DNA of 64,000 bases from Octopus bimaculoides (GCF_001194135.2 NC_068983.1:72284605-72348604), one strand, 5' to 3'. Counted from the stretch's first letter, positions 53 through 61,010 are shown. Made by a program: numbers and translations. The notes: a model not told the origin generated them from the letters alone.

Positions 53-217
53 CTTTTGATCATCAGGTGACCAAACACCACAAGTTATAGAGGCATTGTC
101 CAAATTCAGCATGGATGACCAATATCGTTGCCCAGCAACAGATCCCACAAGTACAAAACCATCCCAGTAGCATATAAGTGCCATACGGCCATCATGTGAC
201 CATGCAAAGTCAGTGAC
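53..217 (-). CDS. TULP4: TULP4 (tubby-related protein 4, WD40 region) internal coding exon, 165 nt / 55 codons
   Basis: Translates as [55 protein letters not shown], matching the TULP4/Tusp N-terminal WD40 segment (human, from memory: [35 protein letters not shown]). Acceptor tttcag|GTC at 218/217, donor AAG|gtaaaa at 53/52, phase 0. Confidence 0.97.
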
Positions 218-6800: not shown

Positions 6801-7690
6801 CTTTATAAGACGTGCATATTGACACAACTCTTGTATGCTTCTGAGAATTGAACTACTCATAGTAGGCATGTAAAAATACTTAAAAGATTCCACAAGAAAT
6901 ACCTCAGAAGAATATAAAAGACTAAATAGGAAGATTTGCTATTAGACACAAAAATATTTCAGAAGGCTGTGTGTCTGTCATCTGAGCATGCTGAGTACAA
7001 AATCAAATATGATAGACAGAGTGCCTTGTATTTATGTCAGGTGTGTGACCATCCAAGCTGTTATTTTTTGGGAATTTACAATTTGGACTATGACAACAAC
7101 ATAACCCCAAGAAATAGTACATGGACTACATTCAGGACAACTTTATGAAATTGGAAATAAATGTTCAATTCCAGAAAGAGAAAGTGATTGAGAAAATGGA
7201 TGGAAGTCTCTGGTGTAGGAAGGTATTGTGAGCTTTGAGCTAGCCAAAAGGCAGCATGCTCATTTAAAATATACTTTGAGAAAGGGAACTATCATGGATG
7301 CATGAGATGTGAATAAAAGCTGGAAATGCAGTCCTACTGACTGATGTCTCCTATTAAAAGCTGGCTACATAAGGCACATGAAATCACACAGTAATTTGCA
7401 AAACCAAGATGCATCTAACAATGATTTGCCACCTTTTTATAATAACAATGCCTGTGTGGTATGCGGAAAATTTCTTGTAGTAATTCTGGTTTGAAAAGGC
7501 ACATGAAAATACATAAGAATACCACACAACAAGTAAGTTATACAAACCCTATAGTAGTTTGGAATCTGATCTCTCACAAGCCTTGCATGTCAACAGCCAG
7601 TCCTCAGAGTCATCTCAGAGCACATAAACATACTGGAGATTATCAAGATGATGTAGATCAACTGAAACAGCTATTATCTGTTGAGATGAG
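3850..7690 (+). mobile_element. Decayed RTE-clade LINE (APE + RT + C-terminal C2H2-like finger), interrupted by a Tc1 element
   Basis: Broken-frame motifs in order: TALVAKELRCLSIDKAAFSETH; IIVQGKFNACVD; NINGLHLLQLC; GKVPDLDGLPIEFLKVGG; DMIFLARQ-QLQEKC; NGAKQSVIWAPTLF; YSDNANF. After the Tc1: LYKTCILTQLLYASEN and CVVCGK…GLKRHMKIH at about 7450-7520. Confidence 0.85.
5999..6780 (-). mobile_element. Tc1-family DNA transposon 3' fragment, IR/DR-type end
   Basis: TA|CAGTGG terminus at 5997-6004; direct repeat gtgc(t/c)atttaatttaagaa near 6004 and 6153; transposase remnants KHSGGSVRVWG…GVGPIIRIKGIMDSKFY and QSPNLYPIENLW…RCKAVLSNFGYPTKY*. Confidence 0.88.
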
Positions 7691-7715
7691 GTGACTATCA
7701 TATATGTACGTGTGT

Positions 7716-7751
<36 letters not shown>

Positions 7752-7760
7752 AGATGCATA

Positions 7761-7994
7761 TGAAGGCGGCGAGCTGGCAGAAACGTTAGCGCGCCGGGCG
7801 AAATGCTTAGCGGTATTTCGTCTGGTGCTACGTTTTGAGTTCAAATTCCGCCGAGGTCGACTTTGCCTTTCATCCTTTCGGGGTCGATTAAATAAGTACC
7901 AGTTATGCACTGGGTCGACATAATCGACTTAATCCGTTTGTCTGTCCTTGTTTGTCTCCTCTTTGTGTAGCCCTTTGTGGGTAGTAAAGAAATA
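7761..7994 (+). mobile_element. Young full-length tRNA-derived SINE with 17-bp TSD
   Basis: Box A tggcagaaacgttagcg, box B gagttcaaattcc, CpGs intact; TSD acacacgtagatgcata at 7744-7760 and 7995-8011. Confidence 0.92.
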
Positions 7995-16241: not shown

Positions 16242-17840
16242 CATCGTTTAACGTCCGCTTTCCATGCTGGCATGGGTTGGACGGTTTGACTGAGGACTGG
16301 TGAGCCAGAGGCTGCACCAGGCTCAATTTGATCTGGCAAAGTTTCTACATCTGGATGCTCTTCCTAATGCCAACCACTCCAAAAGTGTAGTGGGTACTTT
16401 TACATGCCACCGGCACAAGGGCCAGTTAGGCAATTGTGGCAACGACCATGTTCAAAGGTGTTTTTACATGCTACCTGCACAGGAGCCAGTCCAGCAGCAC
16501 TGGTAATGACCACGCTCGAATGTTGTTTTTCACGTGACAGTAAGGCAATGCTGGCAACAATCATGCTCGAATGGTGCTTTTCACATGTCACCAGCACGGA
16601 GACAATCCGTGGACCTAGCAACGATCATGCTTCAATGTGCTTTTAACGTTCCACTGTCAGTGATTTTGATTTTGATTTCGCTTGCTTCAATAGGTCTTCG
16701 CAAGCAAAGTTTATTGTCCAATGAATGAGGGGTATTCATAAGTGGGCTGGTTACACCCACTGGCATAGGCCATGGGCTATGGTCTCACTTGGCTTGTCAG
16801 GTCTTCTCAAGCACAGCATATCTCCAAAGGTCCCGGTCACTAGTCATTGCATTGGTAAGGCCCAATGTTTGAAGGTCGTGTTTCACCACCTCATCCCAGG
16901 TTTTCCTGGGTCTACCTCTTCCACAGGTTCCCTCATCTGCTAGGGTATGATACTTTTTCACACAGCTGTCCTCGTTCATTTCCAAAACATGGCCATACCA
17001 GTGCAGTCATCTCTCTTGCACACCACATCTGATGCTTCTTAAATCCAACTTTTCTCTCAGGGTGCTTACATTCTGTCATGTATGCACACTGACATTACAC
17101 ATCCAGTGGAGAAAACTGGCCTCATTTCTTGCAAGCTTACGCATGTCCTCAGCAGTCACGGCCCATATTTCACTGCCATATAGCATGGTTGTTTGTACAC
17201 ATACGTCATACAGTCTACCTTTTACTCTGAGTGAGAGGCTCTTTGTCACCAGCAGAAGTAGGAGCTCTCTGAACTTTGCTCAAGTTATTCTTATTCTAGC
17301 AGCTATGCTTTCAGAGCATCCATCCCTGCTACTGACTTGGTCACCTAGGTAACGGAAGCTATCAACTACTTCTAGTTTTTCTCCCTGGAATGTGGCATAA
17401 GTTGTTCTCTGCACATTTTCAGTGTTTATAACACCTGAGCATTTGCCACATACAAAAACTATCTTCCCAGTTAGTCTCCCTTTGATATTGCTGCACCTCT
17501 TATATGTCCATAGCTTACACTGGGTACATCTTATGGAGTTTCTACCTACGCCTATTCTACCGATCGAGCAGGGCTATCTACCCGAAGGGATATGTGGTTT
17601 GTCTGCCTTCCTACTTATTAAGACTTTGGTTTTAGCTAGATTGACTCTAAGACCCTTCAATTCTAATCTTTGCTTCCACACCTGAATCTTTTCCTCTTGT
17701 TCTGATAGTGACTCAGCAATTAGAGCAACATCATCAGCATAGAGGAGCTCCCAGGGGCATCCTATCTTGAATTCCTCTGTTATTACCTGGAGGACTATGT
17801 TGAATAAAAGGGGACTGAGAGCTGATACTTAGTGGATCCT
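16242..17840 (-). mobile_element. 5'-truncated RTE LINE (RT with YADD, long 3' UTR, (GAT)n tail)
   Basis: Minus strand reads ALSPLLFNIVLQVITEEFKIGCPWELLYADDVALIAES (YADD 17730-17741), GLRVNLAKTK, VVDSFRYLGD, then GRGRPRKTWDEVVKHDLQTLGL…RDLWRYAVLEKT*. Confidence 0.92.
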
Positions 17841-18044
17841 GTATAGAATTTTGTCAGTGAAGAGGTCGCGGTCTCAAAGCGATGAAAATATTTTGACAAA
17901 TTAAATTTAAATGTTGAAGTGAATCTAACGGATTTTGTGTGTTATTTTAAATGGCTTATAAACACCTTCGACGCTGCAATTGTTTTCGTTCCAGCACACG
18001 ATCTCAGATCAGGTCACTTGCTATGCAAGTACATCTCCGTAATA

Positions 18045-18693
18045 NNNNNNNNNNNNNNNNNNNNNNNNNNNNNNNNNNNNNNNNNNNNNNNNNNNNNNNN
18101 NNNNNNNNNNNNNNNNNNNNNNNNNNNNNNNNNNNNNNNNNNNNNNNNNNNNNNNNNNNNNNNNNNNNNNNNNNNNNNNNNNNNNNNNNNNNNNNNNNNN
18201 NNNNNNNNNNNNNNNNNNNNNNNNNNNNNNNNNNNNNNNNNNNNNNNNNNNNNNNNNNNNNNNNNNNNNNNNNNNNNNNNNNNNNNNNNNNNNNNNNNNN
18301 NNNNNNNNNNNNNNNNNNNNNNNNNNNNNNNNNNNNNNNNNNNNNNNNNNNNNNNNNNNNNNNNNNNNNNNNNNNNNNNNNNNNNNNNNNNNNNNNNNNN
18401 NNNNNNNNNNNNNNNNNNNNNNNNNNNNNNNNNNNNNNNNNNNNNNNNNNNNNNNNNNNNNNNNNNNNNNNNNNNNNNNNNNNNNNNNNNNNNNNNNNNN
18501 NNNNNNNNNNNNNNNNNNNNNNNNNNNNNNNNNNNNNNNNNNNNNNNNNNNNNNNNNNNNNNNNNNNNNNNNNNNNNNNNNNNNNNNNNNNNNNNNNNNN
18601 NNNNNNNNNNNNNNNNNNNNNNNNNNNNNNNNNNNNNNNNNNNNNNNNNNNNNNNNNNNNNNNNNNNNNNNNNNNNNNNNNNNNNNNNNNNNN
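18045..18693. other. Assembly gap, 649 N; other gaps at 3135-3144, 29277-29286, 61384-61553
   Basis: Runs of N in the sequence. Confidence 1.
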
Positions 18694-18861
18694 TATATAC
18701 TTATTTATTTAGAAGCTTGTTTGTTATGGTTGGTCAGAGAGTGATCATTGGTTTTGCACCTATATATATATATACGTATATATGTGTGTGAGTCAATTTG
18801 TCATACTTGATAAGGCACATCAAGCTAAGTAAAATCACTGACTTTCACACATACAGGCTTG

Positions 18862-20739: not shown

Positions 20740-21900
20740 CTGTGGTATTGAGCAGAATAAAAACAGCTGCCATGTATTGGTAGTCACCTCTAAAAAAGCT
20801 TTTGATTGATCTAAATTGATCAGGATACCATGTCAAGTTCTTCACACACCCTCTTTATGATGTATTGCATGAGGTAGAAGCTGTTGGGAATAGATTTGTT
20901 CGGGATAGCACAAGTTGGTGTAACACTAAGTAGGCCACCATAGATGACAAGTGCCAATCAGAAATAAAAATTATATGAGATTTGAATTTTAAAAAATATG
21001 CCAACACAACATTGAAAGAAGGTAAATTTATCAAGAATACTAATATCATTCTAGATAAAGTAGTAGAAATAAGATAATACAAAAAAAACACAAATTTACA
21101 AATACTTAGGAAATCAATGAACTAAATGGTATACAACACATAATTAACAGAAAAGGTTAAGAATAGAATATATTAGATGCATTGGATTAATACTTAAGAA
21201 CAGAGCTAACCAGAACAAGAAATAAAGTAATAGGCGATAATACATTAGCTGTTCCAGTAATAAGTTTTGGTCTTAATACCCTTGGATGTTAAACAAAAAT
21301 AGCAAGACTAGATAGAAAAAATAAGAATGACTGTGGCAGGAATACACTAGCTACAATATGACACAGAAATATATTCACCATGGTTGTAGAGGTTTTATGC
21401 AACCAAAAAAAAAAAACAGTGCTATAAAATATCATTGAAAGACTACAAAAATATTTAGCAAAGATTAATGGAAAACTAACAAAATAGTTATGCAATACAA
21501 GCAAAATATATAATTATCATCAAGAAAGCCACCAAATACAAAACAAAGGCTGAAATGACAATCAATTGGGAACAGAAAGAAAGAAAAAACAACAGATATC
21601 ATGAAAAAGCTAAAACCTCAGCTAAAATGCTAAAACAAAATCCCTGCATGATTAATACTTGAAAATAACTGGACAGGATGAAAATAAACAATGAAAATTT
21701 GGAACGCATGGCTCAAAGCATTCCCACAAGAAGCTTTTGAAAGAATGTAGTGAACCAGAATTCATTAAGTAATTGCAGAATATATGGAAGTTAGGAAGAA
21801 TCAACCAAATTAGATACCTAATCTTAGCTAAGAAAGAATACATCTGCAGGTTGAGGATTTCATACACTGGCAACTGTGTCAGCATTATAAAATCATCATA
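20740..21900 (+). mobile_element. Heavily decayed Dong/R4-type (RLE) non-LTR retrotransposon, RT region
   Basis: Remnants KKAFD (about 20790), MRFE…KYANTTLKEGKFIKNTNIILDK, YKYLG, ELT…NKVIGDNTLAVPVISF, IARLDRK, resembling R4-clade RT domain 7 and thumb. Confidence 0.6.
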
Positions 21901-22074
21901 ATCCAGTATGCCACACCATTAAGAGCCATTTGAATTCTGCATTTTTGCAACATTTGGGGTGAAAAATCTGTAAAGTACCACTTGTAGTGAAACTACCTAT
22001 CGCCATTAGATACAAAACTACTATCGCCATTCTTCTCATTTAAATATAAACAAGCGCGAGCATAGCGGAGAACC

Positions 22075-22260
22075 CATCTCCTTGTCATCACGTGACTGAT
22101 TATTATTCGAAGCGGCAAATTCTTCGAACCGTTCCCGCCAGAACGCAAACTGACCAATCACGGCCCCTAATAAGGTCACGTGATAGAGTATTTTTCTGAA
22201 GCCTTCAGGAGCCGATAATTCGCTATAAATAGATCAACTCATACCCAGCAAATTTGTCTC
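22075..22260 (+). promoter_or_regulatory. Candidate RNA polymerase II promoter: two E-boxes, CCAAT box, TATA box
   Basis: ATCACGTGAC 22087-22096, GACCAATCAC (CCAAT 22154-22158), GTCACGTGAT 22175-22184, TATAAATA 22224-22231, within the only long CpG-rich non-TE island in the window. Confidence 0.65.
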
Positions 22261-23799
22261 GGTTCAGTTTCTCTTTGAGATCTGTTCTGTGTACCACACG
22301 ACAGCAGCAGCAGCAGCAGCCAGCGACCACTTCAACAGCTTCGTCCAGCCAACGATTACCACCGCCGTCGCCACATCAGCAACACGAGTCTACGACTACT
22401 AACCAGCATCAACGTCATGACCAACACAATTACTACTAACCAGCATCAATCCACGAGCGTCAACACGACTTTCTATGTACACCAAACTAAACCACCGCGG
22501 CACATCTCTCTCTTCGATTCTGTTAGGTGACTCAGCTTCACCACGATAAATAAACAGACAAGAGATTTCAGCCAGTGACGAACGACGAACATCTGTATAA
22601 CAAGAATCACGGCCCGGCATGGAAGCCACCACATCACAACTAGTGATCAGCCCTGCCACACACAGCCTCAACTACTTTCACGTACAGACTTTTACTATCG
22701 TGTACACAAGAACTGGTATAAATGCTCACGTGTTACTGACTCTTTCTATCTGCTGTAATATCTCACATACACATACATGTATCACTCACATACACACTTT
22801 TCTTTGTACGACGGCCTGTCTTTGATTATGTTCTTATATGTCGCATTCACACTCTCACACAGACATACACTTTAATGCCACAATAAATATTTCTGTTATT
22901 CATCTCATACGGTTGTGATCTTTCATTACTGGTCATCTATGTTATCGTAGTATAACATATCATGTATATCATCACAGATATATTATTTTTGTGTTCGAGC
23001 ATGTGACGCGTTTAAATAAAAGGAGTCCTCTGTTTTTCCATTCGTCACCATTTCTCCTTTTTGAGTTCGCACGGTCGTTCTTACACACTCTGCATCAAGA
23101 CACAACTTTCGCTCAGTGAAATGGAGGAGTGTTGCACAATGCGGTGCCTTGCTCAAGGACCTAACATGCCAGTTAGTCCAAGAATTTAATCCACAACCTC
23201 TTGTCAGTTCACCAGTTAATAAAATACTAACAGAAAAGAAGTGGAATAAACATACAGCAGATGTCTCAGAGAATGACAATGCAACCATAATCTGCACTTC
23301 CTTAATCAGCACAAACAGTGGGACCAAAGCTAATCAGATAAATAACATCAAGAAGAATCGCCAGGAAAAGAAGTGCCTCTTATTCAAAGTATTGATTCTA
23401 TGAGATGATAAGCTGTCTCTCAAAGAGATGAAGAAATTATCCAAATAACTAGAAACTAAGATATAATGAATGACAAGACTGAAAGTAAAAACAATCCCAT
23501 GAGAATTATCAAAAAAATTTTAAAAAGCACGCACACACAGACATGTATGCCATCACAATCTCATGGCTTACAAATATGTACAACACACAGAATCTATCGC
23601 TGTTAGGTACTACACACAAACTACAAGGGGTACTCTCAGTACAACAGAAAGTATGAAACCAAAACAAAACACTACACATATCCAAGCTATACAAAGTTGC
23701 ATTCAGTAAAGTAACGAAATAAAGAGGAGGAGGAGGAGGAGGAGGAGGAGAAGACAACGACGACAACCATCACCACTACCACCAAGACTGCATTATCAT

Positions 23800-24030
23800 A
23801 GATGTGACTATATCTATGGATATGAATGTAGTAGTCAAAGAACAGGAGAAAACAGGAAAATACCAGGGTCTGGCTAGGGAAGTGTGAAGATTGTAGAGGG
23901 TTTCTACAAAAGTAATCCCAGTTGTTATAGGTGCCCTAGGTACTGTCTGTCACCAACAGATATGACAATTTTCTTACTGAGAGTAGTGTAACTACAAGAG
24001 TTGCATAAATTCAGAAGTCTGCTCTATTAA
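23800..24030 (+). mobile_element. Dong/R4 RLE endonuclease C-terminal fragment
   Basis: IIDVTISMDMNVVVKEQEKTGKYQGLAREV*RL*RVSTKVIPVVIGALGTV. Confidence 0.75.
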
Positions 24031-29275: not shown

Positions 29276-29303
29276 TNNNNNNNNNNCACGCACACACACA
29301 CAC

Positions 29304-30165: not shown

Positions 30166-31100
30166 TCAAGTTAAATCATTAATTTGACGGTTTGTTTTTG
30201 GCAGCACAGAGCTAGATTCAAGCAAATTTTTGCCTCTCATGACCAAAACTTGATCCTTAGTTTCAATCAGTGTTTGGTTAAAAATTGTTTCAGAGAACTG
30301 AATATTGATATCTGGGTTTGCCTGTTGAACTGCATACTTTAAGCCCTCAACCATGTCCTCATGATGTTTCAGCCAAAGCTGTAGGAGACTGCCAAGTTGA
30401 CACATGTTCAGTATAATTGCAAAAAGGTTACGGAGTCTCCTTGGAAAATCTGATAGTGATGCTTCAGTAAATGGAAGGTCCCAATGCTCATCATTTTCTA
30501 AAAAAAAACCTTGTTGATAGCATGCTTCCCTATAAGTTTCACACACACATGACTATTTACACTCCTCAAATCTTGGAATGATTTGGGACCACGTACTTCA
30601 TGCAAAAGGAACTGTAAGTAGTAGCATTCTGCTTGGCTTGGGGGTATACTGTAAACTCTTGCAAGATCATCAGCCCTACGTTTCCTCTTGTGCCATTTAT
30701 TGTTTCTCCAGGTGTAATACTTGGGTAATTGTGGGTAAAAGAATTTTCTTGCATCTTCATCTACTTGACACAACATAAAAAAGGCAGTAATGGTAATTTC
30801 TTTTTGAGAAAGTGTTTGTTGCAAGGCTGTTTGTTTTGTAAAGATAACCCTGTGGCCATTCTCGAGATGGACACTCAGATGAATGATGACTGGGTGCCTC
30901 TCACTAATGGGAAAATTAAAGTTGTGCCAAAAAGCCGCATCTTTCTCTGTCATACTGTGCAACTTTGTCATTTTTATTTATCTGCTGACTGCCATTCTGC
31001 ATAAGAGTGTATGTTGTAGCATCTAAACCTTTGTTTATATATTTGCAAACATACTTAATCGAGTTAACAGAGTTGCAGAATTCAATATTGACTCTAGCTA
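30166..31100 (-). mobile_element. Helitron RepHel pseudogene fragment (Rep motif 3 and Rep-helicase linker)
   Basis: VNIEFCNSVNSIKYVCKYINKGLD (Y-x3-Y catalytic tyrosines, about 31020-31095); FPISERHPVIIHLSVHLENG; ECYYLQFLLHEVRGPKSFQDLRSV; TYREAC…LENDEHWD…LRNLFAIIL; frameshifted. Confidence 0.92.
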
Positions 31101-31486
31101 CCTGTACTTGTTTTTGCTTCTCTGTAGAATACTAATCATCTACATCTACCCCAACTCCTCTTGCAGAGTGTGAGAACATTGTTCTCGGAAACTTTTGTGA
31201 AAATTAAAATGGGGATTAAATGAAAAAATGAGTTACGTGAATATCTTCACAAAAGTGATTGGAATAAATGGCAAATGTGGAATGCCCCATGCATGCACAC
31301 ACATGCATGCACACATACACACGCACACAGTATCGAACATCAGATGAAATGGATGTGAGAGAGAGAGAGAAAAGGTGTGTTGTCATGTATATGTAACATA
31401 CATAAATATACATACATCTTTTTTGTAAGTATATGTGCATGAAAGAGAGAGTGAGTGAATGCCACTTATACATCACTCTCTGTCTT

Positions 31487-34216: not shown

Positions 34217-34345
34217 CTTGCTGTTACGGTCATTGATAAGTTCAATTGACCAACGACCTTCATGTTTTATCCACACAAAAATGATACCATGTGCATCACA
34301 AGTAGCCAATTTTTGATATGGCTCATTCCATCTTACAAGAACAAC
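34217..34345 (-). CDS. TULP4: TULP4 internal coding exon, 129 nt / 43 codons
   Basis: Translates as VVLVRWNEPYQKLATCDAHGIIFVWIKHEGRWSIELINDRNSK, near-identical to human VVLVRWNEPYQKLATCD. Acceptor tgcag|GTT at 34346/34345, donor AAG|gtaggg at 34217/34216. Splices in frame to the 53-217 exon. Confidence 0.97.
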
Positions 34346-34674
34346 CTGCAAAAACAAAATGTTCAATATGAAATCTCCAATATAACAGTTTCATTTTGAA
34401 TAAATGTATATTTAGCAGTATCAAAGGTAAAGTTCAATCAAAATACAGTTGTGTTAATGTTGCTGCATAACTTTTCTAGCAATAGTTACATTGACGCATA
34501 CATCAATTTTACATTATCCTGCTTTTACATAAATTTCTGCAACTTAAGGTTTAGACTCCTTCAAACTCTAAATTCATTAGTTGGGCAATACAGATTTGTG
34601 AACTTGCTTCTTCATTTTCTTCTTCTTCTTATTATTATTATTAATAATAATAATAATAATGATAATAATAATAA

Positions 34675-35190
34675 GGGTTAATAAACCGGACATTATTATA
34701 AAAGATCAGACAAAAAAGGTGTGTTTATTAATTGACATGAGTATTCCTTGCAATCACAATGTAGCAGCGAAAGAATTTGACAAGATCAGTAAATATAAAG
34801 ACTTGCTAATAGAAATTGAAAAAATGTGGCATCTCATAGCAACTACCGTACCAGTGATTGTAGGATCTTTAGGAATGATAAAAAAGGTACTGAAACCTAT
34901 TTGAAAATGATACCAGGCTTACCATGCCTACAAGAAGTGCAAAAAATCATGTTAACTGGAATGACTCATGTACTGAGAAGAGCATTATCGCTGTGAAAAC
35001 AACATCCATTCACAAATTTATTTATTTATTAGTTTTTTTTAAAATACACATTTTACCTGTGAATTTGCATGTGTAAACTGGGAATGCATACAATGAGCTT
35101 CTCTGCCCTAGGTGTACGGAAAACACTCGGCGAGAAATGGAAGAAAATTTGAAGAAAGAAAAAGAAAAAACAACAATAATAATAATAATG
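34675..35190 (+). mobile_element. Young 5'-truncated Dong/R4 element (RLE domain and 3' UTR) in a (TAA)n tract
   Basis: RVNKPDIIIKDQTKKVCLLIDMSIPCNHNVAAKEFDKISKYKDLLIEIEKMW…VIVGSLG (PD-D…KxxKY); one frameshift in an A-run, then TETYLKMIPGLPCLQEVQKIMLTG…LRRALSL* (stop 34994-34996); (TAA)n on both sides. Confidence 0.88.
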
Positions 35191-40688: not shown

Positions 40689-43010
40689 AATTACTAAAAC
40701 ATTAATTGTATTGCTCATCCACTTTCTACAGACTCAGATGTCCAAATGCACTCATCTCATGCAGACACTAATGCTTTTGTACACACATGCACACACATTA
40801 TGCAGACCACACTTGCATCATTTGGCTTTTGATGCTTTTTTTTTTGTTTACTTTTAACCTTTATCAATTGCTACTTTCTAAAATTATTTAAAAGGGTGTA
40901 TAAGCTCTCTTGCAACCAGGTTGAGTTTTGGCCGTTCTCTATTTTTTACCACTTTATTGGCCCAATAAGAAAGCAGTAGCTCTTGACCAGTATTGACTAC
41001 ATAACAAAAACCTAAAGCTGTCCAGTCTCTCTTCTTGAAAATGTACAACCAGAGCAGCTATGTGCTCACAACTATTCTTAGAACAATGCATACAAAACAG
41101 CAATCCACTCACTCTCTTCCAGACAAAATACAAGCTATTCATTACAAAGATGATGATGATGATGATGATCAGAATCTCTCACTGTCTAGTTTCATTCACC
41201 TATTCTTAATACAGAAACTTAAGATCAAGGCAAATTTCAGTTGAACAAATCATTGATTTGCCATATCTCACTTCTGACAGTTTACAAAACACATATTAAT
41301 TTATTTTATTTTATCTCAGTAACATCTCCTGTCCGTTTACACTAACTCATGAGAACTTTATTTCAAAAATATACATAACACTACTTCTGCAACTGAGAAT
41401 TGCTTCTTTTCTCTTTATGAATTATTGTATCATTCAGACTTGTAATTACAAATTTTGTGAGTGAAACAATGCTGTTTAAAGACATGAACTTATCATAGCA
41501 CTTAGGCTAGTAGAGGTCAACACTTCTGGTGTTGACCATAACATATCAAATAAATCAAACTTGTTATATTTAATTTATTACCATTGTTTCTTGCATCTGA
41601 ATTTTCTAGTCTCATCATCATATTATGTCCATGTTTTCATGCTTGCATGGGTTGGACAAGTCTTCTCTAGCATATAAGCAAAGGTATTCTAGCTATGATG
41701 CTCACTGCTTAATTTTAAAAAGTGCATCTGGGCTATATTGTCTAATACACTTTGCTCTTTAATAGACAGTAGAGTGCAATTTGAGGGAGATATAGTTGTT
41801 AGTTTAAACAGTTTGAGTTAAAAATCTCATATATGGGTACCCTCCTTAATGCTAATAAATCAAATACTGAGTGAATATTCAGTTTCATAAATACAACAAA
41901 ATGCCATGTCTGTGATAGGCTTTAAACAGACTCATGATATATACTCCTAATTGTTTAGCTATAATGATTCTTTGGTTATATGTCAGAAGGGAGGAGATGC
42001 CTTCTGAGACCAGTGCGATCAACATGGTTTATATTCCTCTTGAATAGTATCAGTTCAATGGTGTAGGAAAAACATTTACCAGGGATGTAGGAGCTGAACA
42101 TCGCTGTAGGTCTTACTAGCCTTTTGTACTAGCAGCTGTAGTATTTTCTAACACTGAATAAGAAAGAAACCAACCTTTGTGATGCAATATTTGCTATGCT
42201 GAAGATGTTAATTCATTAAGGAAGTATTTTTATTGATAGTAAATCCTTACACTGTAGTGACCTTGTGAGTTGTAATTGTGTATAGTTCATGCCTAAGGGT
42301 AGAGTGATAAAGTTATTTTGTACATATTTTCTTACTCTGTCTAAAGAAGAGAACCATTTAATCACAACTGGAGTGCATGTAATGAAAACTGACCTGGAAA
42401 AGTTGGAGGTGTTAGTAAGAACACACAGAAATAGAAAAGGGTTTTATATGGTCAGGTAATTCTTGGAAGAATGGAGAGAGAAAGAGGGAGAAGGAGGGAG
42501 AAAGAAAGAGATGATATGAGTGAAAAAACGAAAATATATGTGTGTAACAAGATGGTTCAAAGAGAATTTGTATGGTCATAAGTTCAAAGGAACACAAAAT
42601 TGTTTTGTTAGACAGACAGAAATATAACTCCTTAGAACAGAATATGTAGTAGTATTTATAGATCAAAGTGCTTTACTATTATTCAATTTGATCTTATTTA
42701 TTGGCATCATATCAATTAGAAAATTCTGTTAGTTTGAAAGATAGTAGTATTAATGGTGAAATATTTCCAATTATCATGGAATAACATGCTCTTTATCAAT
42801 GGTAAGGATACATGTAATGTATAAAATTATTCAAATAGAAATACCTTCAGAAGGTTGATGTTTCAATAGTTGGATATGGAAAGATGTTATAAACTCTATC
42901 ATTAGTAAGATTAAACTTGTTCATCCAGTCCTTTGGACTAAATGTCTACAGCTTTCAGAATAAAGGCTAACAATAAACACACATACACACATGCATGCTT
43001 TCTCTCTCTA

Positions 43011-43719: not shown

Positions 43720-44637
43720 TGAGGTGGTATCAAAAGATTCCTAGACTAGTTATGTTTAATAAAAAAATAACTTATTTACCTAAATTTTAACATCATCCTC
43801 CTTCGAAATAGTGACCTTGTGCAGCAATATACTGGTCCCAGTGTTCTTGGCACTTTTGTAATCTAGCTCAGAAGTAATTTTCTGTGAGTGGAGTACCTTC
43901 TGCAATTCACTCTTGATCTCGACAATGGTGTTAAAATGGTGACCTTTAAGTTGAATTTTCATTATGCGGAAGAGATGAAAGTCTGCAGGTGCTAAATTTG
44001 GAGAATAGGGTTGATGCAAAAACGATACCATGTTGTTTTTGGTGAGAAACTCACGAGTGCAGAGAGCTCGGTGACAGGGTGTACTTTTGTCATGAAGAAT
44101 CTAATTCTTTGCGCTCCATAGATCTGGTCACTTTCACCGAATGTCCTCCCTCAAATGCTTCAAAACATTGCAGTAGAACTCTGAATTGACAGTCTGGCCC
44201 TGGGTGAAGAATTCTCAATGCAGAATACCACATTTCTGAGGGTGACACACATGGCATATCTTCCAGATCACTCATTGTCATCTAGGGACATTCTTCTGCT
44301 TTTGAAGCACCCATGCCACTTGAAACATTGTGTACAATCCATTGCCTCATTGCCATAAGCTTGCTGAAGCATGCTCAATGTGTCTGTAGCAAACTTCCCA
44401 ATTTTAATGGAAGATTTCACATTAGCCCTTTGTTCCTGACCATGACAAAATTGCAGACTACAGCATACATGTGATCACAAAAACACAAATTTCACAACTT
44501 GCAAAGTAAACACTGTGATGTCACATGGCACACTGCCTTACAAAGGTCGCTGCTAGCTCTCACTACACACACAACTATGTACTACTGTCCGTTGGCACAC
44601 TACAGAACTAGTCAGGGAACTTTTTGATACCACCTCA
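43720..44637 (-). mobile_element. Internally deleted mariner element, 918 bp
   Basis: About 30-bp TIRs tgaggtggtatcaaaa…gactag and ctagtc…tttttgataccacctca|TA (left TA reads AA); transposase remnants EQRANVK…LQQAYG, LHDKSTPCHRA, HQPYSPNLAPADFHLF (YSPDLAPxD signature). Confidence 0.92.
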
Positions 44638-46244: not shown

Positions 46245-47123
46245 GGATCTTTCTGATTTGGTGGACATCATTTGTTTTCTAATGAAACACTTTCAAACTC
46301 AGGACACTGGTAGAATGTGTCATAGAAAACATCTTTTACTCTTAGTGTTGTTGAGAAAAGTTTATATTTTTAAAGTTATTTCGTGTTAAAGTTGTCGTAT
46401 TTCAGTAATTTCAACCAATCACTGACGTCTATTAAGGTGAAAACAATTACTGCTGTGGTTTATCAACAACATGTTGTGACGGTGTAATGGGATCTTTTCC
46501 CTTGAATAAAATTAGTGCTGTTGTTTGTCAACAACAACTATTGTTCGTGCGTTTGTACTGGTTTTAGCTTTAGGGTTTTAGGGTTCAGGTTCGGGTTTTA
46601 GAGTTAGGGTTAGGGTTTTAGGGTTAGGATTAGGGTTAGAGTTATGAGTATTTTTGCCAAATTTGGTGTAAAGTTTGTGGGGGTGTATTGAACAGATTTT
46701 CACCAAATTTAGCAAAAATACTCATAACTCTAACCCTAACCTTAAAACCCGAACGCTAACCCTAAAACCCTAAAGCTAAAACCAGTACAAACACACGAAC
46801 GATGTCATAAATAACAGTACTGCCGATAGTTGTTGTTGACAAACAACGGCACTAATTTTATTCAAGGGAAAAGATCCCATTACACCCCCACAACGTGTTG
46901 TTGACAAACCACAGCAGTAATTGTTTTCACCTCAATAGACGTCAGTGATTGGTTGAAATTACTGAAATACGACAATTTTTAACATGAAATAACTTATAAT
47001 ATAAAAATGTTTCTGTTCTATAAGACAAAATATACAAGTATATGAAGTTTTAATGTGTTTTGGTAGAAAACATACTAAATAAAAACTAAATAAAAAATGG
47101 TGTCCACCAAATCAGAAAGATCC
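46245..47123. mobile_element. Foldback-like non-autonomous DNA transposon, 879 bp, with 8-bp TSD
   Basis: TSD GTATCTTT at 46237-46244 and 47124-47131; 29-bp TIR GGATCTTTCTGATTTGGTGGACA(T/C)CATTT with one mismatch; inner arms about 46362-46672 and 46697-47005 are long inverted repeats containing TTAGGG/CCCTAA tracts. Confidence 0.92.
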
Positions 47124-47654
47124 GTATCTTTTTCGCTTGGGCCTCATCTCAAGGTGTTCAGTCTGGAATTTGAAATTAAGAATTTGAATCTTTACTCAAT
47201 ATTGGCCTGGAATTTGAAATTAGGAATTTCAATCAGGAATTTCAATAATTGGAAATATTTCACCATTAATACTACTATCTTTCAAACTAACAGAATTTTC
47301 TAATTGATATGATGCCAATAAATAAGATCAATCAGTTCTCTTTTAAAATGATATTGCTCTGAAATACTATAAAGTAATCACTTAACAAGTTCCTTTATAT
47401 GAACCCTTACCGAGAGAGATCTAGCAAGTTAATATTCTGATTTTCTTGTCTGCAAATGAGTTTTCATGGCTCTTTATGCAATTCTAATATTTGTTTTGTA
47501 ATATCATGTTACTCTGCTAAAGTACAGAAAATCCCAATAAAGATTTCTGCATGAAGCCATGAAACTTCTGTCATAATATATGTCTAAAAGTACTATACTT
47601 TGATTGTTACATGCATCCATACAAAATTATATCCTATCTTCAGTTCAGTTTCCA

Positions 47655-52260: not shown

Positions 52261-53945
52261 TTCCTTTTCCTTCCATTTGTATGTGTGGATTCAACAACCT
52301 GTAATGGTGTTGGTCCCTGGAATACAGTCATTCCATAGGTTCTTCCAACCTGCCTGGTTCATTTTCTATGAATCTCTCCTTCAACTGGTTTTTGTGTCAT
52401 TTTTCAATACCTTTTTGGCTTTTCATTCCATACATCATTTCCCCTTTGTACTTCGTAATTTTTCCTTCTTCCCAGTATTGTTTTCCATTTTTATACGACC
52501 TCATGTACACCTTATCACCGATTTTGAAAAACTTTGGATTGTCTTTCCTGGTACTTTTTCTTTCCTCGCCAGGTAACAGTTTATCAAAAACTGATTTCAC
52601 CTTCCTTGTGAACATCAATTCTGCTGGTGAGCTTCCTACTGGTCTATTGGGGGTTTGGTGTCACCCTATATACCCTTATGAATTGCTGCAGAACAACTTC
52701 ATCTGTGACTTCCTTGTTTGCTTTTTTCAAAGCTCTTTCAAAAATGTCCACGAAACAATCTGCCTGTCCATTTGATCTGGGATGGTAAGGTACTATCATT
52801 TTATGTTCTACCATGAACATTTTGCAGAATTTTCTAAATTCACAGGGCACAAGTTGTGTTCCATTATGAGATACAATCACGTCTGGGATGCCAAATCTTG
52901 TGAATAATTCATGCAAAAAATTTATTACCGTTTTGAAGGTTGGTCTTTTGCACTTAACAATTTGGAGCCATTTTATAAAACTGTCAACCACTACTAAGTA
53001 GTAATAACCATTTAACAGGACCGCAATATTGATGTAAGAAGTTTTGTTCATAGACTTCTTACTTCTGGTGAAGGCTCCCATTTTTGAGTAGGCAATTTCA
53101 CTGCCAGTGTACATCCTCTGCAGCCTTTTACTACATTTTCAACTTCCTTGTCCATCTTCGGCCAATACACATAACTGCACATAAGTGCTTTCATCCTTGT
53201 GATCCCTGGATGTCCAATATGGAATTCTTTCAACATTCTTTTTTGTCAAGTCTCAGGTATCACTACCCTTCGGCCATACATCAGTACACATGTGTTTACT
53301 TCTTGTTTTTTTCTTACCAAACCATTTTTTTGTTTACTCTCACTGACCACAGAATTTTTTTGTTTAATTAATTAACTTATCTTTTGACGTGTGTTGCTTT
53401 ATCTCCTCCGGAGTTATTGGTAACTCTTGTACAATGTTCCACATTACGTTTTTAATTTCCCCTTTGGCTCTTAGGGCTGCTATTACTGTGTCCTCGAATG
53501 GTTCGCCATTTCTGGGTATTGTCCTAGCTTTTTCATAGTTGTAGTTTAGTAGTATGGTGCCCCATCACTGCAACCTATTTGCTGTATGTCCTAGGATTCC
53601 TCTCTGGGATCCATAAATCGTTAGCAAGGGGCGATGGTCTGTTTATAGTCTAAACCATCTATCATGTATAAACCTGTGGAATTTTTTTATGCCAAATATA
53701 ATCACCAATGCCTCTTTTTCAATTTGGCTATAGTTTTTTTCCACTGGCAATAGTGTCTTTGATGCGTGAGCTATGGCCTTTTGACTGCCATCTTCACATG
53801 TGTGTAGGAGTACAGCACCTACCCCATACTCACTAGCATCTGTTGCCAGTATTATTTCCAATGTTGGACCAAAATATGTAAGCAACAAGTCTGAAGTTAA
53901 CATGCTTTTTAGTTCCTCAAATGCCTTCTGTAAAGATTTCACTAC
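52261..53945 (-). mobile_element. Ty3/Gypsy pol pseudogene fragment (RNase H, integrase, GPY/F)
   Basis: LATDASEYGVGAVL…KNYSQIEKEAL; HIGHPGITRMK…YWPKM…CRGC (HHCC); VVVDSFIKW…FGIPDVIVSHNG…PYHPRSNGQAD; FKIGDKVYMR; several frameshifts, no adjacent LTR. Confidence 0.93.
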
Positions 53946-55829
53946 TCTATGTATACTTCACTATTATCCATAACTTTTCCAATTGTGGCTACAATATCTG
54001 ATAGACTAACAAGCAAAATATAAATAACTATGTGGAACACAAGATAAAAACTTAAACTCACAAAACATCACAGTTTTTAATAGCTGCCTATTTCTCAATT
54101 CAGCAAGTAGGTCATAAAGTATATAAAACACATGACTCTAAACTACAGTAGACATCTGATGCAATCAACTAGAATAATAAAAGAAAAACAAATCTGTCAT
54201 CATACACATTAAAATAGAGTTTTCAGCATTTTTGACACTCTCCACCATCTTTCACAACAACTACAAAAGCAACAAACAACAACAACAAATAATAATAATA
54301 ATGATAATAATAATATGGTAATAATAATAATTTGGAAAATAATTTAAGATTATACCTTTGCTAACGCAATTTTTATTGTTTTTGAAAAATGTTTATGTAG
54401 AAGATTGCCAGTGAAAAATAAAATTCCCCCCCACCAAAATAAATGATTAATATCAAGTTGTAAGATACAATAATTTTCTACTATAGTATATAACATAAGT
54501 GTAATAAATAAATAAAAAATTGATTATACCTCAAAATATTGCTAGTATAATAATAATAATTTCAAGTGAAAATTAGAAAAAAATAAAAAAACAAATAGCG
54601 ATATTGTGTTACTATTTTGGAGAAAATATATCAAACTATAAATATATTACATAAATATGTGTATGTTTACACACACTTGTCATTATTCACACAGGTATCA
54701 CTCTAGGAGCACTTGGCTCTGTTACTGTCAATAAAAACCAAGATACCAGAATGTTCTAATCAATAACACTGCCTTAAACAAAGCTTTAAGGGATTTGAAG
54801 GAAACAAACAAATGTAGCTTTAAATCAATACAACTTAATCAATAGCAAACAAGGCTTATGTGTTTGCTTTTTTAGAATGGCAAACATTTGCTCTATCTTT
54901 TTCTTTCTACAATAAATTCCTATGGATGTATATAGATGAATGTGTGCATGTATACATATTTGTATGTATGCATATATGTGTATGCATGCAATTCATATAC
55001 AATAAACATTATTGATTTTATAAATCAAGATAATTACAACAAATATTTTTTTAAATAATCAGCTGGATATATACATATATATATATATATATATATGTAA
55101 AATTTGAAAATGACTATACCTAATTATTCAAGTTTTATTTATATTTTGTTATTATAGCTTGGAGGTAAAATTTAATAGATTTGCTGCAGAAATTTGAAAT
55201 TATTATTGTAGATTTATCCAAATCTCTATTGTTCACTTTGCAGTCAAGTGAAATAGTCATACAACTGTCACTCAGATTTGACTAATCAATAAAATGAATA
55301 CTTGCAATAACCATGAGTCTCAGAACAATATTGAGCAACAATTTTTTTCTTTTTACAGCTTTATATTTCTTTGATAATTTAACCCTATAACAGATTCTTA
55401 TACAACTTTTTTTTAATCAATTCTAATTTTAGATATCTTTCTTTAAATCACAGTATACCAAATTAGCATAGTATTCACTTTTTCAGCTTAGCTTTATATT
55501 TTCTTGCTTTATTTATTTATTACCAAGTTACAGAAAGTGAGTAATTCTTAATTTCACTATTATACATGTACTGATTCATTCAGCTTTCGCATCAGTTGTT
55601 AGATGCATAGCAACACAATTTTATATTCTGGTATTAATAAACAGGAATAGCTACCAAAATTTAATACAATGGAGCAATCAATAACAACAAAAGATTTTGT
55701 TTTCCATTGATTTCTAGTTCCATATATCAAGAAGTTGGGATCAATTCTATTGATATGAAAAATAAAACTCTGCTATATGGAACTAATTCTTTAGATCAAA
55801 ATTTGATCAAAGTTTTATCAAAATATGAT

Positions 55830-58600: not shown

Positions 58601-60652
58601 ACAGCGTTTCTCAACCTTATCATTTCGGGTCTCCTGTTTCGATTGGAGCCTCCAGCTGTATGAAAATTTCCTGACTGCCCCCCCCCCACCTTGTCAGAAA
58701 ACAGCTTCAGGAGTTGTGAAGAATGAGTTTGTACATAGTCTGTTTCTAAGAGCTATTCTATTGGACCTTTGTCTAATCATTAGAACATTGATTTAATTAT
58801 GAACATAGAAAGAAATTACACATTAATCCCTATTTTAGTAAGCAGTTGTATCTGTATGTGAGAGAAAGAGGGTGAGAAAGAGAGATAGACGATAGTTGAT
58901 TTATGGAAAAGATTATGCTAAACATTTTGAATGCAAATATGTGAATGAAAATTAAGTTCAGACCTCTACATGGTAGCTAGACCTGGTAGAAATAGCAGTT
59001 AAATCTCCCTCAAAACACCCTACTGTCTTAATCCGACAATTTTGCCTATTATGTAGTTTGAAAGAGAAACTGTAACTAAAGATTAAGATTATTAACCCCA
59101 CAAAGAGGTGAAAGAAGAGAGAGGGGAATTCCATTAGAAAAAGTTTTAATCGATTTTCTTGGCAACTATGGAGGCTAGGAAAAAATACAAACTGCATTCC
59201 AATCTATGCACCTGTCTCCACATGTGTGCCATTTTCCACATGAATCCACCCAGCAGTTTGGCTGTGAACCTCAAGACAAGAAAGAAGACAACGATCGCCC
59301 ATGTCCAATCTATATTATAGATTAAATTCCAGACTAGCGGCTAAGGTAACACCAAAACTAGGGTGGTATATTTCACTTTACCCTTATTTACACAACACCT
59401 GCATGGCTCTTTCCTATACCCTTCCCAGACTTGCACCCTAAAAAAGTCACTTCTGTGTTACTGATCCATCGAGAAAGAGTTATGGAAATAAGCCATAGGT
59501 CAACACTGCATTTATTGCAGAACTTAATATCATGGCAAAGTAATGTATCACTATATATATTTATGTGTGAGATATTTAGCTAGTGAGAAGAACGATAATA
59601 CTAGAAAATAGCTAAGAAAAAAACACCAAGGATATCTTAATAGTCACATTAGCATACTTTCAATTAGATATGCCAGTGTATGTACTATGCACTGGATATA
59701 GCAGTTCTGAATATACACTTAGGAATAAATTAGAGCTTATGTTTGTTAATACTTACAACATAGATAGAGTGGGGGATTGGCTGACTTGCTAGAGCTACAG
59801 ACAAAATGCCTTGCACTATTTATTTATGTCTCTTTACTTTCTGAGTTAAGACCCTGTCATGATCGACTTAGCCTTTCATCCTTCTGATATAGTAAAAGAA
59901 CCAGCCAAGTTCGAGAAAACCACTCCCAGCTAGAATTCATGGCTTTCATAAATTGTACCCATAAATATTGCAAATTTTAGTGTGTGTGTGTGTGTGTGTG
60001 CGTACACATGCATACATACGCACTTATAGCTCAGGTAAGGCTGATAATTTAGAAGTCCATTTTGTAGTCATATGACTTTAGGGTCAACATAACTGTTCTG
60101 CACCTTGGGCAAGACTCTCCTTTCGTAACTCTGGGCTAAACAAAGCCTTCTAAGTGAATTTGGTACATGGAAATTGCACAGACGCTCATCTTGAATGAAT
60201 GTGTGGGTGGGTGTGTGTGTGTGTGTGGGTGTTCAACTTTCATCACATGACATCTGAGATTGGTCTGTTTACATCACCATAATTTAGCAGTTCAGCAAAA
60301 ACAGACTGACAGTATAAATGCCAGACTTTAAAATAAGTACTGGTGTTGAATTGATTAACTAAACTCTTCAAGGTGGGGTGGTGCTGCAGCATGTCTGTAG
60401 TTCAGCAACATAGAATAAAAAAATAAATTCATAGCAAGCTCATTCACACAATACTTGTGTGTGTGCACAATAAAAACTGCCGAGTTGTTAAGATCCTGAA
60501 CAGGTAGCTGAGATGTTCAGATGTAGTCATTGTTTTCTACTAAATGATGCAGCTACCTAACCAAAAATAAATTCCATAAGATAGGAACAATTCACCTCTG
60601 TAAACAGAGGCAGCAAATAAAACTGATCGATGAGTTAGTACTGCATTCAGAT

Positions 60653-61010
60653 GTGAAGGCGCATGGCTCAGTGGTTAGAGGAATCGGCTGACAATCAAGA
60701 GGTAGTGAGTTTGATTCCTAGACCAGGCTCTGTGTTGTGTTATTGAGAAAGACACTCTATTTCACATTGTTCCAGTTCATTCAGCTGTGGAAATTAGTTG
60801 CGATGTCACAGGTGTCAAGCTCTATCGGCTTTTGCCTTTCCTATGGATAACTTCAGTGGTTTGGAGAGTGGGAGCTGGTATGCATGGGTGACTGTTAGTC
60901 TTCCATAAACAACCTTGTCCAGACTTGTGCCTTTGAGGGGAACTTTCTAGGTACATCCCATGGTCATTCATGAGTGAAGGGGTCTTTACCCTTGGGAAGG
61001 GTTTTGCTCT
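60653..61010 (+). mobile_element. tRNA-derived SINE, CORE-like body
   Basis: gaaggcgcatggctcagtggttagag (box A)…gagtttgattcc (box B)…ttgagaaagacactctatttcac. Confidence 0.75.

What the first reader, a model, noticed from the sequence alone, without database searches (positions are those of the whole stretch)
22040..22900. Promoter-like CpG island with a possible antisense transcription unit nested in the 34-kb TULP4 intron
Seen: CpG-rich sequence with no recognisable TE similarity; two 10-mers that are exact reverse complements (ATCACGTGAC 22087, GTCACGTGAT 22175) bracketing GACCAATCAC; TATAAATA at 22224; a (CAG)6-containing C/A-skewed leader; TGACTCA at 22528; AATAAA at about 22883. Established: (G/A)TCACGTGA matches USF, MiT-TFE (CLEAR) and SREBP E-box sites, RRCCAATCR is the NF-Y consensus, and E-box + CCAAT + TATA is a recognised promoter layout. 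Inference: a plus-strand unit starting near 22250-22266, either an intronless RNA of about 650 nt or a first exon (possible donor AG|GTGACT at 22526/22527) of an antisense gene overlapping TULP4.
Basis: partly seen in the sequence, partly recalled or inferred. Interest (0 to 1): 0.72.

Follow-up and report, generated by a model that had tools for sequence, protein, structure and literature searches.

The report
Probable solo LTR mimicking a promoter
The CpG-rich, promoter-like patch in the octopus TULP4 intron is real, but it is most likely the leftover long terminal repeat of a retrotransposon, which carries its own promoter and poly(A) signal, rather than a new host antisense gene.

Summary
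The CpG enrichment is strong: 54 CpGs in 1,103 bp, o/e 1.16, against 0.27 in the rest of the intron. The paired TCACGTGA E-boxes are beyond chance. CCAAT, TATA, AP-1 and AATAAA each occur at background frequency.

The CpG-rich block is larger than reported (about 21983-23085) and sharply bounded. It starts with TGT and ends with ACA, and it is flanked by a 4-bp direct repeat (CACT|TGT...ACA|CACT). That is the signature of a solo LTR. Its right end abuts an old SINE fragment. At random placements in this window the signature occurs in 0.3% of cases, or up to about 8% if the boundaries are defined loosely.

An LTR by design contains enhancer repeats, a TATA box, a leader and a poly(A) signal in one orientation. 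This accounts for the whole "E-box + CCAAT + TATA ... AATAAA" layout and the predicted 300-650 nt plus-strand unit.

High CpG o/e does not discriminate. A dispersed repeat in the same intron has o/e 1.1-1.3.

I found no ORF homology, no Rfam hit, no second copy in the window and no copy in 136 kb of Octopus DNA. Genome-wide copy number, orthologous introns and expression could not be tested. A genuine host intragenic promoter remains a live rival. Interest is low.

The parts
21979..21982 (.). Left copy of the putative 4-bp target-site duplication, CACT
   Evidence: CACT lies directly before TGT at 21983.
21983..23085 (+). CpG-rich block of 1,103 bp, 5'-TGTAGTG...TCTTACA-3'. Proposed solo LTR (U3-R-U5), antisense to TULP4.
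   Evidence: Termini plus TSD. Null frequency 0.3%. Left composition change point at 21993, range 21974-22018. 54 CpGs, o/e 1.16. No copy in the window.
23086..23089 (.). Right copy of the putative target-site duplication, CACT
21992..22031 (+). Direct repeat ACTAC(C)TATCGCCATT at 21992 and 22017, enhancer-like, in the putative U3
22087..22096 (.). E-box 1, ATCACGTGAC (USF / MiT-TFE type)
22152..22161 (+). CCAAT box, GACCAATCAC
   Evidence: The motif frequency in the window is not above chance.
22175..22184 (.). E-box 2, GTCACGTGAT, the exact reverse complement of E-box 1
22224..22231 (+). TATA box, TATAAATA
   Evidence: A common 8-mer here (23 in the window).
22250..22266 (+). Predicted start zone (U3/R border). 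A22250 is 26 nt, G22256 is 32 nt and the A of TCAGTT at 22266 is 42 nt after the first T of the TATA box.
   Evidence: Read. Inference only.
22290..22720 (+). C/A-rich, G-poor leader. It contains (CAG)6 at 22302-22320 and a 17-nt direct repeat CTACTAACCAGCATCAA at 22396 and 22433.
22524..22534 (+). Candidate donor TAG|GTGACT, overlapping the AP-1-like TGACTCA
   Evidence: Crude PWM score 6.9, 97.6th percentile.
22549..22554 (+). First AATAAA. It would give an R region of about 300 nt.
22882..22887 (+). It would give an R region of about 650 nt.
23090..23230 (-). Old tRNA-derived SINE fragment abutting the block. Interpreted as part of the insertion target.
   Evidence: BLAST and alignment to the copy at 60652-60790. 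Homology runs from 23203 down to about 23080-23090.
21853..21978 (-). Stretch of intermediate composition between the A-rich flank and the block. Possibly the other half of the split SINE.
   Evidence: Composition only. Sequence continuity with the SINE is not significant (p = 0.23).
34217..34345 (-). TULP4 exon upstream of the host intron
53..217 (-). TULP4 exon downstream of the host intron

Best explanation
The feature is a solo long terminal repeat (about 1.1 kb, 21983-23085, plus orientation) of an LTR retrotransposon. It integrated into an old SINE inside the 34-kb TULP4 intron, and recombination between its two LTRs later removed the internal part.

On this reading the parts map as follows:
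- U3, about 21983-22255: the direct repeats, the two inverted CLEAR/USF-type E-boxes, the CCAAT box and the TATA box. This is the element's own enhancer and promoter.
- R: the C/A-rich leader from about 22256 onward. It ends after one of the AATAAA signals (22549 or 22882).
- U5: the T-rich remainder up to 23085.

A solo LTR keeps a promoter and a poly(A) signal in tandem. If still active, it would make a short unspliced plus-strand RNA of about 300 or 650 nt, antisense to TULP4.

The high CpG content reflects relatively recent arrival, lack of methylation, or both.

Shown: the boundaries, the terminal dinucleotides, the 4-bp flanking repeat, the motif positions and the CpG statistics. Inferred: the LTR identity, the U3/R/U5 partition and any transcriptional activity.
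For: 1. The CpG-rich block is a discrete unit. 54 of its CpGs lie between 22001 and 23076. There are only 2 CpGs in the 1 kb before it.
2. Strongly A-rich sequence (at least 45% A) ends near 21850 and resumes near 23230 on the other side.
3. The block begins TGT at 21983 and ends ACA at 23085. It is flanked by the same tetranucleotide, CACT, at 21979-82 and 23086-89.
4. At 200,000 random placements in this window, TGT...ACA plus a 4-bp repeat within 25 bp of two given boundaries occurs in 0.3% of cases. TG...CA plus a 4-bp repeat occurs in 1.5%.
5. An independent composition change point puts the left edge at 21993, range 21974-22018.
6. Homology to another SINE copy ends at about 23080-23090, which marks the right edge.
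7. No terminal inverted repeats were found, so a DNA transposon is unlikely.
8. The order of elements matches U3-R-U5: repeats and E-boxes, then CCAAT, TATA, a G-poor leader and AATAAA, all on one strand.
9. The block has no coding or RNA-family signal.
10. LTR-retrotransposon pol remnants (RT_RNaseH_2, rve) exist in the same window, with Octopus relatives.
11. High CpG o/e is normal for repeats here. The dispersed repeat at 7763-7931 and its O. bimaculoides copies have o/e 0.8-1.8.
12. The orientation is antisense to the host gene. From established knowledge in mammals, that is the orientation in which intronic LTRs are preferentially retained.
Against: - No homologous copy was found in the 64-kb window or in 136 kb of O. 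bimaculoides and O. sinensis DNA. Repetitiveness, the defining property, is therefore untested.
- The flanking repeat is only 4 bp. Over the wide zones I scanned, the total number of TG...CA plus TSD candidates was what chance predicts.
- The significance rests on coincidence with boundaries that were partly defined after the fact. If the right boundary is taken as the last CpG at 23142, my rough scaling of the null to wider zones gives a p-value near 0.08.
- Continuity of the SINE across the reconstructed empty site is not significant (p = 0.23).
- An R region of 300-650 nt is long for an LTR.
- The paired E-boxes are equally compatible with a host promoter.
Confidence: 0.5

Rival explanations
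1. It is a genuine host intragenic promoter, not of TE origin. An unmethylated CpG-rich patch inside a methylated gene body, with USF/MiT-TFE E-boxes, an NF-Y CCAAT box and a TATA box, drives a plus-strand non-coding or micro-ORF transcript antisense to TULP4.
For: - CpG o/e is 1.16 against 0.27 in the rest of the intron.
- In O. bimaculoides, methylation marks the gene bodies of expressed genes and is absent at TSSs and promoters (PMC9476566). A protected patch in a depleted gene body therefore fits a TSS.
- TCACGTGA occurs twice within 88 bp, beyond chance.
- The TATA-to-purine spacing of 26-32 nt is plausible.
- The donor at 22526/7 is moderate.
- No copy was found elsewhere in the DNA sampled.
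Against: - The block has TGT...ACA termini and a 4-bp flanking repeat exactly at its edges.
- CpG o/e does not discriminate, because repeats in the same intron reach 1.1-1.3.
- There is no ORF homology, no Rfam family and no non-TE exon recognisable downstream on the plus strand by reading the ORFs.
- GC skew is negative on the proposed sense strand (-0.27). That is opposite to the G-rich sense-strand skew typical of mammalian CpG-island promoters (established knowledge, and it may not transfer to molluscs).
- CCAAT, TATA and AATAAA are all at background frequency.
Confidence: 0.25
2. It is another kind of young insertion that happens to carry a promoter: a duplicated promoter plus first exon of another gene, a fragment captured by a Helitron or another TE, or a non-LTR element's 5' UTR.
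For: - The composition changes sharply against flanks that are A-rich on both sides.
- CpG has not decayed.
- The S/T/Q/N-rich reading frames 22233-22436 and 22279-22527 look like a frame-shifted low-complexity coding exon.
- TE-like ORFs that I would call Helitron-like from memory lie 7-9 kb away at 30166-31131. They had no Pfam hit.
Against: - No protein in 5.8 billion matches any of the frames.
- There is no poly(A) tail after AATAAA and no long target-site duplication above chance.
- There are no TIRs.
- TGT...ACA with a 4-bp TSD points specifically to integrase-mediated insertion.
Confidence: 0.13
3. It is a regulatory element of TULP4 itself: an alternative minus-strand promoter or an intronic enhancer using the orientation-independent E-box and CCAAT sites.
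For: - The E-box core is palindromic. NF-Y sites work in either orientation (established knowledge).
- TATAAATA reads TATTTATA on the other strand.
- The patch lies in a 5' intron of TULP4, between the exons that encode the N-terminal beta-propeller.
Against: - The CpG-rich sequence extends to the right of the motif cluster. That is upstream for a minus-strand transcript.
- Sequence to the left of 21983 is CpG-poor and A-rich.
- No minus-strand first exon with homology was found.
- The TSD and termini evidence applies here too.
Confidence: 0.07
4. It is a chance cluster of short motifs in an unremarkable stretch of intron.
For: Most single motifs (CCAAT, TATA, AATAAA, AP-1, donor) occur at background frequency.
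Against: The fourfold CpG o/e contrast over 1.1 kb and the duplicated 10-mer E-box are far beyond chance.
Confidence: 0.03

Closest known systems
Solo LTRs of Ty3/gypsy or BEL/Pao-type LTR retrotransposons
   Same: - A discrete unit of about 1.1 kb with 5'-TG(T)...(A)CA-3' ends and a 4-bp flanking duplication.
- An internal order of enhancer repeats, TATA, leader and poly(A) signal on one strand.
- Non-coding, and antisense to the host gene in an intron.
- pol remnants of such elements lie in the same window.
   Different: - No second copy and no paired full-length element has been seen.
- The family is unidentified.
- R would be unusually long (300-650 nt).
- No primer-binding site or polypurine tract is adjacent, as expected for a solo LTR, so those features cannot be used.
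Orphan or intragenic CpG-island promoters (vertebrate definition), and the unmethylated TSS regions of invertebrate genes with gene-body methylation
   Same: - CpG o/e of 1.16 over more than 1 kb inside a CpG-depleted gene body (0.27).
- Transcription-factor sites clustered at one end.
   Different: - GC is only 43-47%, below the 50% threshold.
- Methylation state, H3K4me3 and TSS usage are unknown.
- The edges are sharp and carry an insertion signature rather than the graded shores of an island.
TATA + CCAAT (NF-Y) + E-box (USF / MiT-TFE 'CLEAR', GTCACGTGAC) Pol II promoters
   Same: - Two 9/10 matches to the CLEAR palindrome flank an RRCCAATCR box.
- A TATA box lies 40 bp downstream of the second E-box.
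   Different: - Binding and function are untested.
- The best Inr-like match, TCAGTT, is 42 nt from the TATA box rather than about 30.
- No DPE or MTE was seen by reading the sequence.
- The same layout is common in retroelement U3 regions.
LTR-derived promoters that drive antisense or chimeric transcripts in host introns (documented mainly in mammals)
   Same: An intronic, antisense-oriented LTR-like unit with an intact-looking promoter and poly(A) signal.
   Different: There are no expression data here, and no such case is established for cephalopods to my knowledge.

Membership tests
Solo LTR of an LTR retrotransposon | Termini 5'-TG...CA-3' | tested here: met
   TGT at 21983-85 and ACA at 23083-85.
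Solo LTR of an LTR retrotransposon | Target-site duplication of 4-6 bp directly flanking the termini | tested here: met
   CACT at 21979-82 and 23086-89. The null frequency is 0.3-1.5% for tight boundaries and about 8% for loose ones by my rough scaling.
Solo LTR of an LTR retrotransposon | U3-R-U5 organisation: promoter upstream of a poly(A) signal on the same strand | tested here: met
   TATA at 22224. AATAAA at 22549 and 22882, all on the plus strand. The motifs are individually common, so the support is weak.
Solo LTR of an LTR retrotransposon | Homologous copies elsewhere in the genome, some as pairs flanking gag-pol | not testable with these tools
   None in the window and none in 136 kb of Octopus loci. 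No cephalopod genome could be searched.
Solo LTR of an LTR retrotransposon | An empty site in a related genome, or a target sequence that is contiguous once the element is removed | tested here: inconclusive
   SINE homology reaches the right edge. Continuation into the left flank is not significant (p = 0.23).
CpG island (Gardiner-Garden and Frommer criteria) | Length of at least 200 bp and CpG o/e of at least 0.6 | tested here: met
   1,103 bp with o/e 1.16.
CpG island (Gardiner-Garden and Frommer criteria) | G+C of at least 50% | tested here: not met
   42.7% for the block and at most 49% in any 400-bp window. The genome background is 34-36%.
CpG island (functional sense) | Unmethylated in the germline and marked as a promoter | not testable with these tools
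   Requires WGBS, ATAC or H3K4me3 data.
Pol II TATA/CCAAT/E-box promoter | The motifs are present in canonical order and spacing | tested here: inconclusive
   The order is correct. A purine lies 26-32 nt after the TATA box, but the only Inr-like hexamer is at +42, and no DPE or MTE was seen. The E-box pair is non-random.
Pol II TATA/CCAAT/E-box promoter | A mapped transcription start | not testable with these tools
   No RNA data. Exact-ORF look-ups found no contig carrying the ORFs.
Nested antisense host gene | A transcript with a conserved ORF or exons, or a known RNA family | tested here: not met
   No protein hit for any frame. No Rfam hit even at E <= 1. No recognisable non-TE exon downstream on the plus strand, judged by reading the ORFs.
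DNA transposon / MITE | Terminal inverted repeats | tested here: not met
   No TIR of at least 9 nt perfect, 12 nt with 1 mismatch, or 15 nt with 2 mismatches between the boundary zones.
Processed retrocopy (LINE-mediated) | A poly(A) tail after AATAAA and a long TSD | tested here: not met
   No A-run follows 22887. The 11-nt near-repeats at the edges are at chance level by my estimate.
Penelope-like or retrozyme LTR | A hammerhead ribozyme in the repeat | tested here: not met
   The Rfam scan at E <= 1 found nothing in 21800-23400.

The most novel reading that the evidence does not exclude
Whether or not the patch derives from an LTR, it is kept unmethylated and acts as a live intragenic promoter. 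Its paired CLEAR/USF-type E-boxes and NF-Y site drive a short antisense RNA across the TULP4 intron in octopus. That would be a lineage-specific, possibly nutrient- or stress-responsive, cis-regulator of TULP4.
Probability: 0.15. Interest if true: 0.4.

Novelty: new member of a known kind. Interest (0 to 1): 0.15.

Why it matters
If it is a solo LTR, this is routine repeat annotation. Its main value is as a caution. In CpG-depleted, gene-body-methylated invertebrate genes, a young LTR looks exactly like an orphan CpG-island promoter with a built-in terminator. Motif layout and CpG o/e alone cannot separate the two. If the unit turned out to be transcribed, it would be one example of LTR-derived antisense transcription in a cephalopod gene. 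That would be of modest interest for TE exaptation in a TE-rich genome.

Tried and rejected
- Second copy or LTR pair in the window: none found.
- Rfam, gathering threshold on the whole window and E <= 1 on 21800-23400: no hits. tRNA scan: none.
- Exact-ORF look-ups of 22619-22825(+) and 22399-22671(-), and of two TE ORFs in the window: none on record, so the source assembly's ORFs are not indexed.
- One chimeric query of all stop-free frames of 21996-23116 against 5.8 billion proteins: no hit at E <= 0.01.
- TULP4-exon search, intended to reach orthologous introns: it returned only short proteins from other taxa and no octopus TULP4. The orthologous locus could not be fetched.
- Exact 35-mer scan of JGI metagenome contigs: 0 matches.
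- TIR and long-TSD search at the edges: nothing above chance.
- Test for SINE continuity across the reconstructed empty site: not significant, and too few SINE copies to build a consensus.
- Flank-to-flank continuity through other TE copies in the window: only a distant protein-level match of the right flank (23789-23947) to 34722-34880, which was not informative.
- Six Octopus genomic loci (136 kb), fetched through integrase relatives, to look for copies or LTR pairs: no copy of the block and no intact LTR pairs.
- Heat-shock element, ERSE, DPE/MTE and a Pol III type-3 promoter were considered by eye and rejected, because spacing or consensus did not fit.
- Pfam on several neighbouring ORFs that I had taken for Helitron or mariner from memory: no hits, so those labels are not used.

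Full report
**Observation.**
- ATCACGTGAC at 22087
- GACCAATCAC at 22152
- GTCACGTGAT at 22175
- TATAAATA at 22224
- (CAG)6 at 22302-22320
- TGACTCA at 22528
- AATAAA at 22882, with further copies at 22549 and 23015

The CpG enrichment is the strongest signal in the window. The 22040-22700 stretch has o/e 1.15, against 0.28 for the whole window and 0.16 for the kilobase upstream. G+C is only 43-49%, so the vertebrate CpG-island definition is not fully met.

TCACGTGA occurs three times in 64 kb against 0.22 expected, and two of the three are in the feature. None of 20,000 local dinucleotide shuffles gave two copies. By contrast, RRCCAATCR, TATAAATA, AATAAA and TGACTCA all occur at about background frequency. 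The donor TAG|GTGACT is only moderately good, at the 97.6th percentile of plus-strand GT sites.

**Context.** Two minus-strand exons, 34217-34345 and 53-217, encode a sequence that matches the Pfam WDR35/TULP4 N-terminal propeller. It is 80-86% identical to proteins named tubby-related protein 4.

The best relatives of an integrase fragment in the window come from Octopus bimaculoides and O. sinensis. A dispersed repeat in the window has 70-90% identical copies in O. bimaculoides loci. A cephalopod (Octopus-like) origin is therefore supported.

The window is TE-rich. It contains RT_RNaseH_2 plus rve at 52.4-54 kb, RVT_1 at 17.6 kb and several SINE families.

**Anatomy.** The CpG-dense zone is larger than reported. 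It holds 54 CpGs between 22001 and 23076, with only two CpGs in the preceding kilobase and a long gap after 23142.

Strongly A-rich sequence (at least 45% A) ends near 21850 and resumes near 23230.

On the right, 23090-23203 is an old tRNA-derived SINE fragment on the minus strand. It is 62% identical to the copy at 60652-60790, and the homology runs up to about 23080-23090.

Exactly at the edges, the block reads CACT|TGTAGTG...TCTTACA|CACT. That is a 1,103-bp unit (21983-23085) with TGT...ACA termini and a 4-bp flanking direct repeat.

- At 200,000 random placements in this window, TGT...ACA plus a 4-bp repeat occurs within 25 bp of two fixed boundaries in 0.3% of cases. TG...CA plus a 4-bp repeat occurs in 1.5%.
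- A composition change-point analysis puts the left edge at 21993, range 21974-22018.
- The right edge is set by the end of SINE homology.
- With looser boundaries, for example the last CpG at 23142, my rough scaling of the null brings the coincidence to about 8%. The total number of TG...CA plus TSD candidates in the broad zones I scanned is what chance predicts. The evidence is therefore suggestive, not conclusive.
- No terminal inverted repeats and no long duplications exist at the edges.

**Interpretation.** TG...CA ends with a 4-6 bp duplication are the signature of integrase-mediated insertion. A lone unit of this kind is a solo LTR. This is established knowledge of LTR retrotransposons.

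An LTR is by construction a promoter (U3: enhancer repeats, upstream elements, TATA), followed by a leader (R) that holds the poly(A) signal, followed by U5.
- direct repeats at 21992 and 22017
- the two inverted E-boxes around a CCAAT box
- a TATA box, with a purine 26-32 nt downstream at 22250-22256
- a G-poor C/A-rich leader
- AATAAA at 22549 and 22882
- a T-rich tail

A solo LTR, if active, yields a short unspliced RNA of about 300 or 650 nt. The orientation, antisense to TULP4, is the one in which intronic LTRs are usually tolerated (established for mammals, inferred here).

**Why CpG richness does not decide.** In O. bimaculoides, methylation sits on the gene bodies of expressed genes and is absent from TSSs and largely from TEs (PMC9476566). 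A CpG-preserved patch in a depleted gene body could therefore be either a protected TSS or a recent arrival.

The control within the same intron is telling. The dispersed repeat at 7690-7930 has o/e 1.3, and its copies in O. bimaculoides loci have 0.8-1.8.

**What argues for a host promoter instead.**
- The duplicated 10-mer E-box is clearly non-random.
- No other copy of the block was found in the window.
- No copy was found in 136 kb of O. bimaculoides and O. sinensis sequence fetched through integrase relatives. That sample only excludes hyper-abundant families.

**What argues against a host promoter.**
- The insertion signature at the edges.
- No similarity of any reading frame to 5.8 billion proteins.
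- No Rfam family, even at E <= 1.
- No non-TE exon recognisable downstream on the plus strand, judged by reading the ORFs.
- A negative GC skew on the proposed sense strand (-0.27).

**Limits.** The tools held no cephalopod genome or transcriptome that I could query by DNA.
- Exact-ORF look-ups failed.
- The TULP4 search returned only short proteins from other taxa.
- A metagenome scan found nothing.

Copy number, orthologous introns, methylation and expression are therefore untested. These are the decisive data.

**Verdict.** The "promoter-like unit" reading is partly supported as a description. The best explanation is a solo LTR (confidence about 0.5). A genuine host intragenic promoter is second (about 0.25). 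Other young promoter-bearing insertions follow (about 0.13), then a TULP4 regulatory element (about 0.07).

Novelty is low: a new member of a known kind. Interest is 0.15. The most novel reading not excluded is a live E-box/NF-Y-driven antisense promoter regulating TULP4, at about 15% probability and of moderate interest if true.

Noticed in passing
window 7690-7931 (also 2728-2874): A CpG-rich dispersed repeat (o/e 1.1-1.3). It has 70-90% identical copies in O. bimaculoides loci L001 and L002, and none in the three O. sinensis loci sampled. It served as a control showing that high CpG o/e is normal for repeats in this intron.
   Followed up: partly
window 42688-42774 and 47245-47331: Two 87-nt arms that are 100% complementary, 4.47 kb apart (I12). 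This could be a very young TIR transposon or an assembly artefact. The ORF inside it, 43783-44100(-), gave no Pfam hit.
   Followed up: partly
window 46388-46541 and 46826-46979: A 154-nt inverted repeat, 95% complementary, with 284 nt between the arms (I2), nested within the unit above. It has a foldback or MITE-like structure.
   Followed up: no
window 52400-53957 (-): An LTR-retrotransposon pol remnant (RT_RNaseH_2, rve). Its closest relatives are 'K02A2.6-like' proteins of O. bimaculoides and O. sinensis. No LTRs for it were found in the window, and it has no similarity to the block at 21983-23085.
   Followed up: partly
window 17283-17828 (-) and the N run at about 17990-18700: A reverse-transcriptase fragment (RVT_1) directly next to an assembly gap of about 700 N. 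Shorter N runs lie at 29277-29286 and about 61400-61550.
   Followed up: no
window 30166-31131 (-): Three adjacent ORFs (71, 159 and 128 aa) that looked Helitron-like to me from memory. None has a Pfam hit at E <= 0.01. Their identity is unresolved.
   Followed up: partly
window 23789-23947 (+) and 34722-34880 (+): Two degenerate copies of a TE-like coding segment, 34% identical at the protein level. One lies just downstream of the feature and the other near the TULP4 exon. The copy at 34602-34901 has no Pfam hit.
   Followed up: no
window 22233-22527 (+): Two overlapping S/T/Q/N/H-rich frames are linked by a 17-nt direct repeat, CTACTAACCAGCATCAA, at 22396 and 22433. A 1-nt shift would join them into one low-complexity ORF of about 100 aa ending at the candidate donor. 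No homologues were found.
   Followed up: partly
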